In this document: piece after piece, positions 6,939 through 26,219 of the stretch | How the letters are laid out: each line of letters opens with the position of its first letter | Numbering within the stretch: position 1 is the stretch's first letter | From: Vitrella brassicaformis CCMP3155 | Lineage: Eukaryota; Protista; Chromerida | Reading direction: 5' to 3' | NCBI GenBank assembly: GCA_001179505.1 | Contig: CDMY01000733.1 | Location: 1 to 26,219, forward strand | Length of the DNA: 26,219 bases | Program-made: the position numbers and the translations under genes | The notes under the pieces: generated by a model | What the model saw: only the letters and a program-made list of their open reading frames with translations | The model's database searches: none | Told to the model about the DNA's origin: nothing

Positions 6939-8364
6939 TCACTGGGTAATTCGCACGCTCCTGACCGTCTTGGGCTTCCACGTGCTGATGGTGGCGTTGG
7001 CCGCACTCACATACGCCTCTGCCGCAGTGCACCGCCGCACCGTCTTGACCATGTTGTACCCCTCACACACCAACGAGTGGCCGTCGCCACGGACGAACGA
7101 AGTGGACGCCACTGCAGCGCCATCCTGGGGCTCGTCGGCAGGGGCCTCGTTCTGGCCGGGTGTGATGGGCTGCTCGTCCCCCTTGGGCTCGTCAACGATC
7201 TGACAGACCAAACAACGAAGGCAACCGCAGCCATCATCAATCCATCCCGGTGTTGTGTTATCATGTGTGTGGGTCGGCCTCACTCATTCCCTCACCTGTG
7301 CAGAGCCGTCGTTAGCCTCGTCAGCGATGCCCTCCACCTCACCCACCATGGCCACACCGTCGTCGACGGCATTGATGCCGTCGACCGCCATTGGCGTCGA
7401 CTCACACACACCGCTGTTGTGCTGGGAGGGGGCGGGGAGGGGGTAGGGAGCACCAACAGACACGTGGAGCGCCGCAGCGTCCGGCAGGTGAGCATGAGCG
7501 GCTTCTACGATGGCACACGAACGGCCCTCGTCAGCACAACGATACACCTGAAGACAGACAGACAGACAGACCCAAGGACCAACACAACACACACGTGCAC
7601 CCACCATATGCTAATCTCATGTGCGGAGTCGCCCTCGTTCATTCCCTCACCTGTGCAGAGCCGTCGTCAACCTCGTCAACAACACCCACTACGACAACGG
7701 CATCGATGGTCCCCAACCCATCGCCACCATCCCCCCCACACCCACCCTCGCCAGCAGCCCTGCTACCCTCCTGCACCACCCCTCGGCGGCTCGTGTCGTG
7801 CTGTGTCGTCAGGCGGGGGGCGGGGGACGGGGAGGGGGACACACGCACTGCCGACGACTGACGGTGCGAGGCTGACTTGTCCGCACCCCCCGCTACACGC
7901 CCCTTGGCGCCCACACGTGTGCCCTTCGTCACGCTGGCGCGGGTGGGCGGCTTGGCCGGCGGGGCCTTGCGGGCGACTGGACACAGTCGAGCTCCGCCGC
8001 CGCCGAGCTTGGGGTTCTTCTGCAACATCTCCCGATACCTCCTCAGATCCTCCTCCTTAGCCCTCTGGTGTGCCCTGGCCTTGGCCGCCGCCCTCTCCCT
8101 CTGGCGCACAGCCGCTGCCGCCATATGCTGATTGACGTCAGGTCGACTACTGGGCGGCTTGCTGCCGATGCATGCACCGCTGCCGAGTCCTGCAGGCCGC
8201 TGAGGACGGCACTGGTGGCCACTGCCGTGATGCTGCGCCTTGCTGCTGTTGCCGGGGGGTCCTGTGCGTGGGAAATACATGCCGCAGCCCATGTAGCTTG
8301 CGCGCCCCGACAGTCCATAGTCCGCCGGGAGACCGTTCTTCTTCACCGCCGGCGGCGGCGGCAT
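6939..8364 (-). CDS. Hypothetical protein (~382 aa), basic N-terminal half and acidic C-terminal half
   Basis: ATG at 8364 in a CCGCCACCATG context. In-phase exons 8364-7849, 7770-7651, 7547-7296 and 7199-6939 have GT-AG boundaries. I recognise no domain. Confidence 0.6.
7284..7667. repeat. Internal duplication of an exon 3' end plus splice donor
   Basis: The 29-mer TCATTCCCTCACCTGTGCAGAGCCGTCGT is identical at 7284-7312 and 7639-7667, and weaker similarity extends into both exons. Confidence 0.85.
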
Positions 8365-20952: not shown

Positions 20953-23214
20953 ATGATGGTTGTCTGTCTGTCTATCTTATAAAGGGGAGATCATGGCTGG
21001 GAACGTTGAACGGCCAGGGGTGCGGTGTGGATGGTTTCTGGCAGGCAGGCAGGGCAGGTCTTTTGTCATCGGTGGCTGTGCTGTGCGGTGGGGTGGGTGG
21101 AGTGAGGCCGGGGTAATTCGATGAGCGATCGAGCCTATAGGCGGGTCAGTCAAGTCAGTCAACGATTATCTGATTGCGTTTTTTCTCCCACCCATGCAGC
21201 CAGCCAGCCAGTCAGCCAGCCAGGCACAGCACAGCACAGCACGTGGGAGGTGAGGTCCATTTTGCATTTTGCATGTGTGTGAGATATCGCATCTATCCAG
21301 TCGGTCATTGATCGCATTAACTAACTGCATAGACAATCCTTTATCCATACATCCATCCCATCGACTGACTGACTTATTGATGGATTGATTCCGCGGTGTT
21401 AATTCTGTCTGTCGCTGGCTCACTCACTCACTGGCGAGGCGAGCGGGAGGTTTTCGTTGAAATCCTTTTCTCCATCCGTCCATGAGTCCATCAGTGAGTA
21501 CCAGTAGGCAGGAATGAGTGTGCACGCGCGGAGAGAGGTTCGAGCAGAGAGGCGGGAGGGCTGTCTTGATGGATACATAGGGCTGTGTGGTGGGTGGGGG
21601 GGGTACCATGGTATATTTAACTAGCACACAATATGTTGGCTGGTTTTGGCTGGCTGGCTGGATGGATGGATGGATTGGATGGGCTCTGTGGGTGGCTGGG
21701 GTGGATGGAATTGACGTGCGTGCGTCCGTTTGTGCGTGCGGCCTCTCGCCGCCCGCCTTGCCTGCCTGCCTGCATGAACGTGTGTACCTTATCTATCTAT
21801 CTGTCTCTGTGGGAGTGTGTGTGTGTGTGTGTATTTCGCCATGAAGGACGGCCCTCCCCTTCCCGTCTCTCCCTGATGGATGGACGGACGGACGGACGAG
21901 TGGGTGGAGGCATTTGTACGTGAGGGGGTGTTAGGTAGGGGGAAATTGGCAGAGGAGGGAGACATTTGTTGTCGTTTTATAACCCAACATGACTGACTGA
22001 CAAGAGTGCGAACGATGAGTAGCTGTCCGTCCGGAGGGTAGGTACATCACATGAGTGCTGTGTGTCTGTGAGTCTGTGAGTTGGATGTATGTGTGGGTGT
22101 CTGTATGTGTGTATGTGTGTATGTGTTTTATTGAGTCAATGGATGAATGCACGGGTGGGTATCCGGCCGGTGCGTAAGGAAGTAGGAAGAGAGGCCCCCC
22201 ATGTAGGCACATACGTGGCTCCACTGCGGGTCTGTCTGTCTGTATAGCCATCGGTGAACTGATTGATCCCGCCAGTCCGCCCGCCCAGCCCCACGTTGGC
22301 AAGATGCGTACCAACGCACTCACTCCCTCACTGCATAGACAGATAGCACCACACAATCGCTCCTGCTGCTGCTGCTGCTGCTGTGTTGTGTTGCTGGGCT
22401 GAGCTGAGCTGAGCTGAGCCGACAGAGAGACGCACATTCCGGTTTCCTGCCTGCCTCCCTAAGAGCATTTTTCTGTCTTGTTTACTTACTTACCGGCTGC
22501 ATGTATCTATCTGTCTATCGAGAAGGCGCGGCGATCGATGGGTGCTCTACTCCCGCCCTCCCGCGCCCGCCTGCCTGCCTGTCTGCCTGTCTGCCTGTCT
22601 GTCTGGCTGTCTGGCTGCCTGTCTGCCCGTCTGTCTGCGCCTGTGCATTGGATGAGGGCGCGGTGGCTGAGTGACTTTATACGTACCTTCGTAATAAAGT
22701 CAGCAGCACAAAAGTGGGAGGTAACTCCACTTTCTACTATTACACAGAGACCGAAAGCTCGCATGGTGGGGGTAGGGACGACGGTGTCAGCAAGCTGTGT
22801 TTGTCCTAATTAGCTGCGTACATGCGCACCTGCGTCCTCCTGACGTGCATTGCATGCCCGGGTTCTTCCTCCTCCTCTGTGTGTTGGTTCCTTTTCTCCC
22901 GATTGGCCTGCCTGCCTGCCTTTATCCGCTCGTCAGTCAGAGATCAATCCGTCCACTTATATGATGACATACATGCACACATGTGTGGCTGTCTGTCTGC
23001 CTGGCTGTCCGGCTGTTTGTCTCTCTGGCGAGTTGGGAAGCGGCATGGATGGATGGATGGATGGACAGAGAGGGACACTGATGTACACATGCAGTGCACC
23101 CACATGATGTGAGATGCTGAAATCGTGCTCGCGGGCAGAGACCTCCACAAATATGTACCTTCCTCCCCTCACACCCTGACACCCACGACCCACCCGCCCG
23201 CCCGCCTTGTCTGT

Positions 23215-25948
23215 TCACCCTTGTGTGTGCAGCAGCAAGCGCGAGTTGATGTCCTGCACACCAGCAGCACACCACAGCACAGCAAAACCACAGACACACA
23301 TTGCCACCTTTGACACGTTTCCTTCCCGCCCACTCTCTGACCCTCAGTTTCTGCAGCAGTGCTGCCTGCGGCAGCTGGTATGTCTCGGCTGCAGCGTTGC
23401 GCACGAAGCCGCCCAGGACGAGCAGCTCGATGGCTGTCGGGTGCCGCCCCACGGCTGCCATGAACCGCTCGTTGGCCATCCTGACGCTCCGGTACTTGTC
23501 GTCGGTGGCGTGGGCCAAGACGTTGGTGAACAGACGAGACACCGTCCTGCAGGAGGTTGGTAAATGGTGAAGTGAAAGAAACAAGGGCAGGGAGAGAGAG
23601 GTGATGGGAGAGGGTAGGGGTTGGATTGGGCTGGGTGTGGGGCTGATATACCTGATACACTCTTGGTATTCGTCTGGCGGCAGGGAGCTCTTGAGACGCA
23701 ATATCATGTCATCCACCTGTACACACCGAAACAAACTTCAGGCAATGTGCCCACTCTCTCTCTCTCTCCTTCTGTGTGTGTGTGTGTGTGTGACCTTTGA
23801 GTAGAGCCCCGCTGCCCCGCTGGACATGTCGGTGCCCAGCGACGACTGATGGTTCAGCGGAGGCGTACCATTCGGCCCTGCACACACAACACACACCACC
23901 CATCATGCCTGTGGGGGCGCGAAGCCATTTGCCCACTGACATCGATTGACGTCGTGCGTACTTGTGACGGCCTGTGTTGCTGCTCTTGGAGTGGAGTCCT
24001 GTGTGTGTGATGGTGGTGGTGGTGGTGGTGGCAGCTGCAGGGACGAGCCGGGCGGAGGTTGCGCTGTTTCGGGGGCAGGGGTGACCGTGCCTGCACAGAG
24101 AACAGCACAACACAACACAGCACAGAGGCGCATTGACGAACAGGAAACCGCACAATGCCGTGCAGTGCAGCATCCATTCATTACTTACCTTGGGTGAGTT
24201 GCGCCTGTGCGTCTCTCTGCAGCTGCGGGGCCACCATCTTGGGCCGCGTGGCCAGGCCATGGCCACCTTGCTTGACGGCCTCCTCCAGTCGTGTCAGTGT
24301 GGAGGTGACGTAACTGTCGAACTGCACCGAGCCGCGCTTGCGCTTGACGTGTGCCATGGCCGCGGACACCGACGTGCCCTGCTCTACCATGAACCACACT
24401 ACCACTGCGCGGCACATGACACAGACAGACAGACAGACAGGCGTTGAGTGTGCCCGTGTGTTTGCGGTTTTGTGTGTGTGTGTGTGTGTGTGTGCACCAG
24501 CGGCGCTGTGGACATCTCCTGAGTGGTCGTACACGAGCACGGCACGGTTCCTCTGCTGTGACGAACGAACCACACGGGCCGCCTGGTGGGTGATTGGATT
24601 GACACAACCAACACACATGGCCCCGTGGGCCCCCACGGGCTCTCCTGCGATGTGTGCGTGCACCGCAGCCACCTACTCACTCACCCACCTCATCGTAGGG
24701 CAGCTCAGCCTTGTCATAACACGATAAATGGACCACACGAGGCCTACACCCACACCGACAAAACACACACATTCATTCATTCATTCATCTAGGTGGTCGG
24801 GTCGGTGAGGCCGTACACCCACCACACTCACTTTCTGTCGAGTGGGCATGGCCGTTGCGTGAGGTTGACGACCGTCCTGACCCGCAGCAGCCGGACCGAC
24901 TGCGGGCTGTTCTTCAACACACCCTCGCCACACACATACAAGGCAAACCCACGACCACTCTGTCCCCACACACAGAGACATCCATCCATACATCCATCCA
25001 CCCACCCATCCATCCATCGGGCACCCACCCAGCCACCATCTGTCTGTCTGTCTTTCATCGTGTGTCTGGTCACCCTCTTGGGTGCGATGATCTCTGACGG
25101 CGTTGGCAGCGGCACCGACGGCTGTTTCCGCCTTCCCCGCCCCTTGCTGCCGCGGACCACGCAGAAGCCAAACCGACGGCTGAAGGCTTGCAGGCCACCT
25201 ACACAGAGGGAGGGGCAGCAAAAGGACAGACAAGGCAACAGACACACACAGCGTGTGTGTGTGTGTGTGTGTGCGTGTGTCCGTCTTTCTGTCTGTCTAT
25301 CTGTCGGCATTCTGCACACACGTGTCGGTGCATTGCACCTACCTACACATTTTACCTTTGACGATGAGGACTTCTTTCGGCCGCGCTTGCGATGAGGACA
25401 GCCAGTCCAGCAGCCCGCCTACACCACTGCTGCTGCCGCTGCCCTGACTGGCGGTGTCTGACGCATCAGAATAGATCACCACCTGCACACGCAACGCACA
25501 CAGCTCAGCCAGCCAGAGTTGTCTTATGCCGACGGATGGACACCGACATACATACCGTTCTCAGTCGGGTGACGTTCCTCAGCCATTCTCTGAATTTCGC
25601 CTCATCAGCGCCCTTGTGCGCCCACGGGTGGACGGCCTCCCGGATGTGATGCCGCTCATACGCGTCGCTAAAATCAGCGCACACCACCAGGTGGGCCCCA
25701 GAAAGACTCACATAAGTGCATGCAGAGCCGGCCGTCTCCCGCTGACTCATGTGTCACCTGTCGCGCGCGTCGAAAAAGATGACCGAGTGGGTGGGCACGT
25801 CCTGGAGCAGGCAGTAGGCCAGGGAGGGCGATATCAGCTGGTGCTTCTCGCGAGAACCGACGCCCTTTTCCTCTTTCTCGCCACCCAGCAGTGACGCCTG
25901 CCTCTGGTGATGACCATCGGATGATTCAGTGCTGCTGCCACAACCCAT
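23215..25948 (-). CDS. 526-aa N-myristoylated/palmitoylated rhodanese (CH2) + dual-specificity pseudophosphatase + PUB domain protein, 13 exons
   Basis: In-phase exons 25948-25758, 25667-25556, 25482-25356, 25198-25074, 24959-24832, 24743-24689, 24582-24498, 24404-24189, 24090-23941, 23877-23795, 23716-23652, 23546-23342 and 23253-23215 total 1581 nt. The protein starts MGCGSS. Rhodanese: FFDARDSDAYERHHIREAVHP, VVIYSD, LIVKGGLQAFSRRF. DSP: PSEII, LYVCG, VRTVVNLT, VLVYDHSGDVHSAAVVVWFM, AMAHVKRKR. PUB: TVSRLFTNVL...DDKYRSVRMANERF...AIELLVLGGF. Confidence 0.88.
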
Positions 25949-25969
25949 TTTCCTTCACTCTTAAAGCTG

Positions 25970-25996
25970 AGCTCGCATCATGAAGCTAAGCTCGCA
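25970..25996 (-). promoter_or_regulatory. Two tandem TGCGAGCT(T/C)AGCTT motifs immediately upstream of the pseudophosphatase-PUB gene
   Basis: The plus strand shows AAGCTGAGCTCGCA and AAGCTAAGCTCGCA, with core 8-mers at 25970-25977 and 25989-25996, 22 and 41 nt from the ATG at 25948. Confidence 0.55.
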
Positions 25997-26219
25997 CCTC
26001 GAAGCGGCGTATGGATGTGCGAAAAGGCCGGTGAGGACCTTTCCTGTAGTTAGCTCAATAGAGGATCTGCTGGGCGGTAAGTCCCAGAGTAAGAGTGCTT
26101 TTACTTTGGCCAATCAGTCAAAGTTGTTTCTGTCCATGTATGGCATCATGAAGGGTGGTCAACACAGATCTCACTTCGGTGATGGCTGTATCTCCTCAGA
26201 ATGCTTTCCTTGTCTTTCC

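What the first reader, a model, noticed from the sequence alone, without database searches (positions are those of the whole stretch)
23215..25948. Membrane-anchored MKP-like pseudophosphatase fused to a PUB (p97/Cdc48-binding) domain
Seen in sequence: the 13 spliced exons encode MGCGSS, a rhodanese/CH2 domain, a DSP domain, a Pro-rich linker and a PUB domain. Established: rhodanese+DSP is the MAPK-phosphatase/STYXL1 layout. MG-C-x-x-S is a typical myristoylation + palmitoylation signal. PUB domains (PNGase, HOIP, UBXD1) bind the C-terminal tail of p97/VCP, and phosphorylation of its penultimate tyrosine blocks that binding. I know of no described protein joining these modules. Inference: this may be a lipid-anchored adaptor that recruits p97/Cdc48 to membranes and links it to MAPK or phospho-signalling clients, forming an uncharacterised signalling-to-degradation module in this lineage.
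Basis: partly seen in the sequence, partly recalled or inferred. Interest (0 to 1): 0.85.

Follow-up and report, generated by a model that had tools for sequence, protein, structure and literature searches.

The report
Lipid-anchored dead MKP-like protein with PUB domain
A real, transcribed gene of the alga-like alveolate Vitrella brassicaformis encodes a probably membrane-anchored, catalytically dead MAPK-phosphatase-like protein ending in a Cdc48/p97-binding PUB domain. It belongs to an uncharacterised family also found in Chromera, gregarine-like apicomplexans and Toxoplasma, so it is interesting but not unique to this lineage.

Summary
Thirteen GT-AG exons on the minus strand (25948-23215) give a 519-aa protein identical to Vitrella brassicaformis CEM31657.1. 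One intron-free 1622-nt contig from a public run joins exons 1-12, so the PUB exons belong to the same gene.

- **Domains:** Pfam finds Rhodanese (5.7e-10) and PUB (8.4e-13) above threshold. DSPc is below threshold, but a family profile (DUSP10, 6e-6) and an AlphaFold2 model (Foldseek, TM about 0.8) confirm the fold.
- **Dead enzyme:** the phosphatase motif HCxxGxxR reads YDHSGDVH, with neither the cysteine nor the arginine.
- **PUB pocket:** five of the six residues compared in the partner-peptide (PIM) pocket match PNGase.

The reading is only partly supported. The architecture is not special to this lineage. Members occur in Chromera, Digyalum, Toxoplasma (TGME49_271380) and Besnoitia, with a C-terminal fragment from Ancora, and all seven full-length members start with MG. 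The Toxoplasma member is experimentally N-myristoylated, peripheral to the plasma membrane and dispensable in culture (Broncel 2020). No MAPK-docking motif is present, the dead pocket probably cannot hold phosphate, and Cdc48 binding is untested.

Best reading: an acylated membrane scaffold that docks Cdc48 through its PUB domain. It is a new variant of known kinds, of moderate interest. The scan also noted other PUB and UBX fusions elsewhere in this genome.

The parts
23215..25948 (-). Coding span of the 13-exon gene (519 aa; Vitrella brassicaformis CEM31657.1)
   Evidence: Splice model is identical to P0001. A spliced 1622-nt contig in run X7 covers exons 1-12.
25949..26044 (-). 5'UTR, at least 96 nt and unspliced. 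It holds a short uORF (25981-25961) and two in-frame stops ahead of the start codon.
   Evidence: X7 contig record 23 reaches 26044. Translation of the upstream sequence.
25928..25948 (-). N-terminal MGCGSST: predicted N-myristoylation (Gly2, Ser6) and palmitoylation (Cys3) signal
   Evidence: Read directly from the sequence. All 7 full-length family members start with MG, and six have Cys at position 3 or 5. The Toxoplasma member is experimentally myristoylated.
25149..25843 (-). Rhodanese / MKP CH2-like domain, aa 36-160 (exons 1-4). The catalytic Cys position is not conserved (VVIYSDAS).
   Evidence: Pfam PF00581 at 5.7e-10. Profile matches to DUSP16/DUSP10 MAPK-binding domains at 2e-4. Alignment to DUSP6 and DUSP10. 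pLDDT about 80-90.
24253..25106 (-). Dual-specificity-phosphatase fold, aa 175-325 (exons 4-8), catalytically dead
   Evidence: Family profile against DUSP10 at 6e-6. Foldseek gives TMt 0.77-0.82 and rmsd 2.2-2.8 A to DUSP10, DUSP19, DUSP8 and DUSP4. Pfam DSPc is sub-threshold.
24505..24540 (-). P-loop equivalent VLVYDHSGDVHS (aa 261-272). Asp265 replaces the nucleophile Cys and His271 replaces the phosphate-binding Arg.
   Evidence: HMM alignment to DUSP10 LLIHCQAGVSRS. No family member has the Cys or the Arg.
23810..24225 (-). Disordered Pro/Ser/Thr-rich linker, aa 335-412, with a run of seven Pro at 24031-24011
   Evidence: pLDDT below 50 across 335-412. The segment is not conserved in the family alignment.
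23224..23806 (-). PUB domain, aa 414-517 (exons 10-13). The core KYRSVRMANERF lies at 23497-23462 and Asn447 at 23524-23522.
   Evidence: Pfam PF09409 at 8.4e-13, above the gathering score. Exon 12 alone scores 6.5e-11. PNGase and UBXD1 PUB structures are matched. pLDDT about 90.

Best explanation
The gene encodes a peripheral membrane scaffold. The N-terminal MGCGSS is myristoylated on Gly2 and probably palmitoylated on Cys3. This would tether the protein to the cytosolic face of the plasma membrane or pellicle. A rhodanese + DSP module follows, built like a MAPK phosphatase or STYXL1 but without any catalytic residue in either domain. It most likely serves as a protein-binding surface, not as an enzyme or phosphate reader. 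A roughly 80-residue disordered Pro-rich linker then carries a C-terminal PUB domain whose PIM pocket is largely intact. That pocket most likely captures the C-terminal Leu-Tyr tail of cytosolic Cdc48/p97, bringing the unfoldase to whatever the dead-phosphatase module holds at the membrane.

Shown here: the gene model and its transcript, the three folds, loss of the catalytic residues, and conservation of the architecture and of the MG start from chromerids to coccidia. Shown elsewhere, for the Toxoplasma member only: N-myristoylation and a plasma-membrane-peripheral location. Inferred: palmitoylation, Cdc48 binding, the identity of the clients and any link to degradation.
For: - **Gene and transcript:**
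- **Domains:** Pfam PUB and Rhodanese are above threshold. The DSP fold is confirmed by profile and by structure. The best two-domain structural matches are STYXL1 clusters and two axonemal chains.
- **Dead site:** YD..G..H replaces HC..G..R. Neither the Cys nor the Arg is present in any of 7 members.
- **PUB pocket:** N447, Y457, R461, N464 and F467 align with PNGase Asn41, Tyr51, Arg55, Asn58 and Phe61. PMC4017264 describes Tyr51 as the pocket wall, Arg55 as the clamp on a C-terminal carboxylate, and a conserved 'cornerstone' Asn (Asn102 in HOIP) that I equate with Asn58. N447, R461, N464 and F467 are invariant in the four-member alignment.
- **p97 as a general PUB ligand:** PNGase, HOIP and UBXD1 PUB domains all bind the p97 tail at 3-12 uM.
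- **Membrane anchoring:** all 7 members start with MG, and 6 of 7 have Cys at position 3 or 5. TGGT1_271380 is a high-confidence myristoylated substrate that responds to an NMT inhibitor, is classed 'PM - peripheral 2', and is predicted palmitoylated by CSS-Palm.
Against: - No binding data exist for any family member.
- I could not check whether Vitrella Cdc48 ends in the Leu-Tyr motif.
- PUB domains can take other partners, as HOIP does with OTULIN.
- Pro46 of the PNGase pocket is Ala452 in Vitrella.
- The Toxoplasma member was absent from both published palmitoylomes.
- The Toxoplasma member has a fitness score of 0.05, so any Cdc48-linked role is non-essential in tachyzoite culture.
- The Toxoplasma protein may be orthologous to a paralogue rather than to this gene. 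AlphaFold DB shows a second, 873-aa look-alike with a chromerid-type accession (A0A0G4H387, organism not printed).
Confidence: 0.5

Rival explanations
1. It is the same acylated scaffold, but the PUB domain binds a different PIM-bearing partner, for example a deubiquitinase or another C-terminal Leu/Met-Tyr protein. The protein would then have nothing to do with Cdc48.
For: HOIP's PUB domain prefers OTULIN more than 40-fold over p97, and the authors expect further PIM partners (PMC4017264). PUB domains are fused to many different modules among the hits and in this genome: RING, PEX14 and tandem PUB proteins.
Against: The residue equivalent to PNGase Arg55 closes the pocket around a free C-terminus. 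It is Arg or Lys in all members, which favours a C-terminal ligand such as the p97 tail. All three characterised PUB domains bind p97.
Confidence: 0.25
2. It has a STYXL1-like role unrelated to membranes or Cdc48: a structural or chaperonin-linked component of the flagellar axoneme in zoospores or gametes.
For: The best two-domain matches among solved structures are chains of mouse radial spoke 3 and the bovine sperm axoneme (9d2f_H, 9fqr_Xs; E about 1e-10). The RS3 paper lists STYXL1 among the RS3 proteins. STYXL1 clusters top the Atlas structure search.
Against: Sequence identity is only about 16%. STYXL1 has neither an MG start nor a PUB domain. The Toxoplasma member is expressed in non-flagellated tachyzoites and fractionates with the plasma-membrane periphery.
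Confidence: 0.08
3. The DSP domain is not dead. The conserved Asp acts as a nucleophile, or the pocket still reads phosphorylated residues such as the phospho-Tyr tail of Cdc48 or a MAPK activation loop.
For: Asp at the Cys position is kept in 6 of 7 members, and the neighbouring Tyr in 6 of 7, which suggests constraint on the pocket.
Against: The phosphate-binding Arg is missing in every member (His, Leu, Ala or Thr), and one member has Gly at the Asp position. No kinase-interaction motif is present, and in coccidia a roughly 210-residue insertion splits the rhodanese domain at that site. An acidic residue in an Arg-less P-loop should repel phosphate (inference).
Confidence: 0.07
4. It is a gene-model artefact in which two neighbouring genes, a pseudo-MKP and a small PUB protein, are wrongly merged.
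For: None was found. The only gap is that the exon 12/13 joint was not listed in the read table.
Against: One intron-free contig joins exon 12 to exon 1. The same fusion is encoded by intron-free transcript ORFs in Digyalum and two other transcriptomes, and by Chromera, Toxoplasma and Besnoitia genes.
Confidence: 0.01

Closest known systems
STYXL1 / MK-STYX (rhodanese + DSP pseudophosphatase of animals)
   Same: Both have a two-domain rhodanese + DSP layout with no catalytic Cys. STYXL1 is the best two-domain structural match (Atlas TM by hit 0.62-0.75; PDB axonemal chains).
   Different: Identity is about 16%. STYXL1 has no MG acylation signal, no Pro-rich linker and no PUB domain. From my own knowledge, MK-STYX keeps the P-loop Arg, whereas this family has lost it. 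Orthology was not shown.
MAPK phosphatases DUSP10 (MKP5), DUSP16 (MKP7) and DUSP6 (MKP3)
   Same: They are the best sequence-profile matches among solved structures for both the catalytic domain (DUSP10, 6e-6) and the N-terminal MAPK-binding rhodanese domain (DUSP16/DUSP10, 2e-4). The MKP-like strings VVIYSDAS and GGLQAFSRRF align with DUSP6.
   Different: HCxxGxxR is replaced by YDxxGxxH. There is no Arg-Arg kinase-interaction motif. This family also has an added lipid anchor and PUB domain.
PUB-domain p97 cofactors: PNGase, UBXD1/UBXN6, HOIP
   Same: The PUB domain is above Pfam's threshold. The KYRxxRxxNxxF core and the upstream Asn are conserved.
   Different: The PUB domain is C-terminal and is joined to a dead MKP module and a lipid anchor, not to a glycanase, UBX/VIM or RBR ligase. 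Binding to Cdc48 has not been shown.
Toxoplasma gondii TGME49_271380 / TGGT1_271380 'PUB domain-containing protein'
   Same: It belongs to the same family. A Rhod+DSP family HMM scores about 1e-33 (8.3e-34 for ME49, 3.7e-34 for GT1), Pfam finds a PUB domain, and the protein starts MGQSCT. It is experimentally N-myristoylated and plasma-membrane peripheral.
   Different: It is 1011 aa, with a roughly 210-residue insertion splitting the rhodanese domain and a long low-complexity tail. Pfam sees only its PUB domain. No paper text mentions it by ID. One-to-one orthology with the Vitrella gene is unresolved.

Membership tests
MAPK phosphatase (MKP-type DUSP) | N-terminal rhodanese/CH2 (MAPK-binding) domain | tested here: met
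   Pfam Rhodanese at 5.7e-10, above the cut-off. The best solved matches are the DUSP16, DUSP10 and DUSP6 MAPK-binding domains.
MAPK phosphatase (MKP-type DUSP) | DSP catalytic fold | tested here: met
   Profile against DUSP10 at 6e-6 over nearly the whole domain. Foldseek TMt 0.77-0.82. Pfam DSPc alone is below threshold.
MAPK phosphatase (MKP-type DUSP) | Active-site signature HCxxGxxR(S/T) with nucleophile Cys and phosphate-binding Arg | tested here: not met
   YDHSGDVHS aligns with HCQAGVSRS of DUSP10. Cys and Arg are absent in all 7 family members.
MAPK phosphatase (MKP-type DUSP) | Kinase-interaction motif (basic Arg-Arg cluster) in the rhodanese domain | tested here: not met
   The segment between the two blocks aligned with DUSP6 (aa about 79-98) has no Arg-Arg motif (inspection). 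It is variable in the family alignment and carries a large insertion in coccidia.
STYXL1/MK-STYX pseudophosphatases | Rhodanese + DSP with a substituted catalytic Cys | tested here: met
STYXL1/MK-STYX pseudophosphatases | Orthology (shared descent to the exclusion of active MKPs) | not tested
   No phylogeny was made. Identity is about 16%. Sequence profiles hit active DUSP10 best.
PUB-domain p97/Cdc48 cofactors | PUB domain above the curated threshold | tested here: met
   PF09409 scores 48.5 bits against a cut-off of 34.3. Exon 12 alone scores 42.4 bits.
PUB-domain p97/Cdc48 cofactors | Intact PIM pocket (PNGase Asn41, Pro46, Tyr51, Arg55, Asn58, Phe61) | tested here: met
   By alignment to 2HPL/2HPJ, N447, Y457, R461, N464 and F467 are conserved. 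Pro46 is Ala452 in Vitrella and, by inspection of the core strings, Pro in the other members. Residue roles come from PMC4017264.
PUB-domain p97/Cdc48 cofactors | Binding to the C-terminal Leu-Tyr tail of Cdc48/p97 | not testable with these tools
   No Cdc48 sequence of this organism could be handed to the tools, and there is no binding assay.
Dually acylated (N-myristoyl + S-palmitoyl) peripheral membrane proteins | Met-Gly start that is the true N-terminus, with Ser/Thr at position 6 | tested here: met
   The protein starts MGCGSS. Two in-frame stops lie upstream in an unspliced 5'UTR. All 7 members start with MG.
Dually acylated (N-myristoyl + S-palmitoyl) peripheral membrane proteins | Experimental acylation and membrane location | tested here: inconclusive
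   This is shown only for the Toxoplasma member: YnMyr capture, NMT-inhibitor response and 'PM - peripheral 2' (PMC7373427). That protein is not in the two palmitoylomes. There are no data for Vitrella.

The most novel reading that the evidence does not exclude
A family found across the Myzozoa (chromerids, apicomplexans, probably dinoflagellates) forms a dedicated, lipid-anchored docking site for Cdc48/p97 at the plasma membrane or pellicle. Its degenerate MKP module, with Asp in place of Cys, selects clients such as a MAPK or the tyrosine-regulated Cdc48 tail itself. Kinase signalling would then gate membrane-protein extraction.
Probability: 0.15. Interest if true: 0.7.

Novelty: new variant of a known kind. 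Interest (0 to 1): 0.45.

Why it matters
Cdc48/p97 is steered by its adaptors, and very few PUB-domain adaptors are known (PNGase, UBXD1, HOIP). This would be one aimed at the inner face of the plasma membrane. It is conserved from free-living chromerids to Toxoplasma, where the member has so far been named only for its PUB domain. Recognising that TGME49_271380 and its relatives carry a dead MKP module gives a concrete hypothesis for an N-myristoylated, plasma-membrane-peripheral protein of unknown function. It also adds a second, independently degenerate rhodanese-DSP pseudophosphatase lineage beside animal STYXL1. The Toxoplasma member is dispensable in culture, so the immediate biological stakes are moderate.

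Tried and rejected
- **Exon-by-exon Pfam:** only the PUB exon scored. The rhodanese and DSP domains are split over too many exons, so the whole protein had to be recovered through the representative search.
- **The search for homologous proteins, three searches:** each was saturated at 8000 word-sharing candidates. In two of them, rows of the query alignment itself were not returned, so their blanks say nothing about distribution.
- **Rfam and tRNA scans:** nothing was found in or near the gene, including the high-depth element at 26015-26107.
- **Kinase-interaction motif:** I looked for one in the rhodanese domain and found none.
- **Literature:** no paper joins PUB with DSP and rhodanese, and no paper text mentions TGME49_271380. 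Only supplementary tables of Broncel 2020 list it.
- **Origin of transcript P0050:** I tried to show a dinoflagellate origin from a spliced-leader remnant. Only six bases (CTCAAG) follow the adapter in one contig, which is inconclusive.
- **Repeat-driven joints:** joints such as 23009/24421 and 23286/24421 have sides of only 18-21 nt lying in (CAGA)n and (CA)n microsatellites. I rejected them as splice events.
- **Gene-fusion artefact:** considered and rejected (and the orthologues).
Full report
**1. The observation**

The minus strand of 23215-25948 reads as 13 exons, all flanked by GT..AG. They give a 1560-nt CDS and a 519-aa protein starting MGCGSS. A library-wide phmmer search with exon 12 alone returned a 519-aa protein, P0001, at 100% identity. 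P0001 is letter-for-letter my model. It is CEM31657.1 / UniProt A0A0G4GN88 of Vitrella brassicaformis CCMP3155, named only 'unnamed protein product' or 'Rhodanese domain-containing protein'.

**2. Transcript evidence**

Logan contigs of four public runs were laid on 22300-26219.
- Run X7 holds one 1622-nt contig whose pieces fall on exon 12, exons 9, 8, 5, 4 and 3, and exon 1 plus 96 nt of 5'UTR.
- The unlisted stretches between those pieces are 148, 134 and 114 nt. These match exons 11+10, 7+6 and 2, so the contig is the fully spliced mRNA from exon 12 to the 5'UTR.
- Six listed joints equal the model's introns exactly, and run X1 shows five of them independently.
- Run X6 is colinear across introns, so it looks like DNA, and it lacks the spliced form.
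- The apparent 5-nt shift at the exon 7/8 joint is an aligner ambiguity (CGCAG against CGCTG, one mismatch).

The exon 12/13 joint was not displayed. It rests on the annotation and on the motif LRD[IV]xxRL, which is conserved across the family and only splicing creates. Two in-frame stops precede the ATG within the colinear 5'UTR, so MGCGSS is the true N-terminus.

**3. Domains**

Single exons gave only a PUB hit. The whole protein gives the following:

| Pfam family | E-value | Bits (cut-off) | Residues |
|---|---|---|---|
| PUB | 8.4e-13 | 48.5 (34.3) | 432-509 |
| Rhodanese | 5.7e-10 | 40 (22.2) | 53-150 |
| DSPc | 4.6e-4 | 20.4 (33.5, below) | 242-303 |

A profile of four family members was searched against PDB sequences. 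It hits the DUSP10 catalytic domain (6e-6, nearly full length), the DUSP16 and DUSP10 MAPK-binding rhodanese domains (2e-4), and the PNGase and UBXD1 PUB domains (1e-4).

An AlphaFold2 model built on that alignment has mean pLDDT 72.9. It shows three confident domains (about 36-160, 175-325 and 412-519) and disordered stretches at 1-33 and 335-412. Foldseek superposes the middle domain on DUSP10, DUSP19, DUSP8 and DUSP4 at TMt 0.77-0.82 and rmsd 2.2-2.8 A.

The two best PDB hits cover both N-terminal domains (about 314 columns). They are chains of mouse radial spoke 3 and the bovine sperm axoneme. The RS3 paper lists STYXL1 among its proteins, and STYXL1 clusters top the ESM Atlas structure search. 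The chain identity itself was not printed by the tool. The 'MKP/STYXL1 layout' is therefore correct.

**4. Dead enzyme**

In the HMM alignment to DUSP10, LLIHCQAGVSRS faces VLVYDHSGDVHS. His becomes Tyr, the nucleophile Cys becomes Asp265, and the phosphate-binding Arg becomes His271.

Across seven family members the Cys and the Arg are never present. Asp is kept in six, and one has Gly. The rhodanese domain has VVIYSDAS where MKP3 has VVLYDESS, so it too lacks a conserved catalytic Cys.

The segment corresponding to the MKP kinase-interaction motif has no Arg-Arg cluster. It is variable in the family, and in coccidia it holds an insertion of about 210 residues.

So this is a pseudophosphatase. 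I infer it is not a phosphate reader either, and nothing supports a specific MAPK link.

**5. PUB domain**

Alignment to the PNGase PUB structures 2HPL and 2HPJ pairs the residues as follows:

| This protein | PNGase | Role (PMC4017264) |
|---|---|---|
| N447 | Asn41 | not described for PNGase in the passages read; I equate it with HOIP Asn85, which H-bonds the PIM Tyr |
| Y457 | Tyr51 | side wall of the PIM pocket |
| R461 | Arg55 | binds the free C-terminus and closes the pocket |
| N464 | Asn58 | the conserved 'cornerstone' Asn (Asn102 in HOIP); the PNGase number is my mapping |
| F467 | Phe61 | not described in the passages read |

N447, R461, N464 and F467 are invariant in the four-member alignment. 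The Arg55 position is Arg or Lys in all seven members. Only Pro46 differs, being Ala452 in Vitrella.

PNGase, HOIP and UBXD1 PUB domains all bind the p97 tail at 3-12 uM. [quoted passage not shown] Cdc48 binding is therefore plausible, but I did not test it. I could not obtain the organism's Cdc48 sequence or run a complex prediction.

**6. The family**

The following also carry a C-terminal PUB domain:

| Organism or source | Protein | Length | N-terminus |
|---|---|---|---|
| Chromera velia | Cvel_740 | 564 aa | MGCASS |
| Digyalum oweni | P0011 | 473 aa | MGDNYK, with an internal MGNSIKC at Met17 |
| Unidentified transcriptome | P0047 | 629 aa | MGCQTS |
| Unidentified transcriptome | P0050 | 471 aa | MGCCTS |
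| Toxoplasma gondii | TGME49_271380 | 1011 aa | MGQSCT |
| Besnoitia besnoiti | P0006 | 1119 aa | MGQACT |
| Ancora sagittata | P0033 (fragment holding only the end of the DSP domain plus PUB) | 235 aa | not informative |

Pfam sees PUB, and at best a marginal rhodanese hit, in the coccidian proteins. That explains their name.

Foldseek against AlphaFold DB clusters adds A0A2P4YZN4 ('PUB domain protein', aligned over query 1-513), A0A1Q9EQZ0, A0A7S0DJE0 and an 873-aa look-alike, A0A0G4H387, that I take to be a chromerid paralogue from its accession. Organisms were not printed. The ESM Atlas holds a 113-member PUB cluster at score 0.91.

The architecture is thus conserved across chromerids and apicomplexans, and probably more widely in Myzozoa.

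**7. Membrane anchoring**

All seven full-length members start with MG, and six have Cys at position 3 or 5. In Broncel et al. 2020 (PMC7373427, supplementary file 4), TGGT1_271380 (UniProt S7WKB5, the 1011-aa GT1 member of the same 90% cluster) has these properties:
- It is a high-confidence N-myristoylated substrate.
- It was captured by two of the three capture reagents and responds significantly to an NMT inhibitor.
- Its hyperLOPIT class is 'PM - peripheral 2'.
- CSS-Palm predicts palmitoylation, but it is absent from the two palmitoylomes.
- Its fitness score is 0.05, so it is dispensable in culture.
- EuPathDB lists orthologues in Eimeria, Hammondia and Neospora, but not in Plasmodium, Babesia, Cryptosporidium or Cyclospora.

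No paper text mentions the gene ID. No paper joins PUB with DSP and rhodanese, and no paper treats apicomplexan DSP pseudophosphatases.

**8. Verdict**

It overreaches on lineage specificity and on the MAPK or phospho-client link.

My preferred mechanism is an acylated plasma-membrane or pellicle scaffold that docks Cdc48 through its PUB domain and holds an unknown client with the dead MKP module (confidence about 0.5). The main rival is a non-Cdc48 PUB partner (0.25).

It is a new variant of known kinds, combining a STYXL1-like pseudophosphatase with a PUB adaptor, and is of moderate interest. Elsewhere in this genome the scan also noted a PEX14-PUB fusion and a DUF72-UIM-UBX fusion. I did not test these. 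They suggest that Cdc48-adaptor domains are shuffled freely in Vitrella.

Noticed in passing
window 26015-26107 (just upstream of the 5'UTR, near the window's end): A stretch of about 93 nt has a summed contig depth of about 1,000 to 40,000 in all four runs, against roughly 5-110 for most of the gene. Loose ends on both sides are identical across runs, and position 26056 reads G instead of C in three of the four runs. It looks like a high-copy element found in other contexts: a dispersed repeat, an organelle-derived insert or an abundant small RNA. Rfam and ARAGORN find nothing there, and it is single-copy within the window.
   Followed up: partly
window 25961-25981, minus strand: A seven-codon upstream ORF (six residues, MMRAQL, then a stop) lies in the 5'UTR, in the same frame as the main ORF. 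A second in-frame stop sits three codons before the start ATG.
   Followed up: partly
window 22638-23139 (downstream of the stop codon): Unspliced contigs here have 3-20 times the depth of the coding exons in the RNA-like runs X1, X2 and X7. This could be a 3'UTR inflated by (CTGT)n and (GGAT)n repeats, or a separate, more abundant transcript. I did not resolve which.
   Followed up: no
window introns at 24412-24495, 25230-25300, 23745-23795, 24960-25070 and elsewhere: Nearly every intron carries (CA)n, (CAGA)n, (GGAT)n or (GAAT)n microsatellites. These produce false long-range joints in the read table, for example 23009/24421, with sides of only 18-21 nt.
   Followed up: yes
P0049 (Chromera velia Cvel_19054, 833 aa): A second Chromera protein has a PUB domain and C-terminal tail very like that of Cvel_740. 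Its N-terminal 700 residues are entirely different and have no Pfam hit, which suggests recent PUB-exon shuffling.
   Followed up: partly
P0060 / P0006 (Toxoplasma TGME49_271380, Besnoitia): In coccidia the rhodanese domain is split by a low-complexity insertion of about 210 residues, exactly where MKPs carry their kinase-interaction motif. The HMM matches aa 99-160 and 372-665 in the Toxoplasma protein.
   Followed up: partly
L003 1-20 (transcript contig encoding P0050): After an Illumina adapter remnant the contig starts CTCAAG. From memory, these are the last six bases of the dinoflagellate spliced leader, a weak hint that this family member is dinoflagellate.
   Followed up: partly
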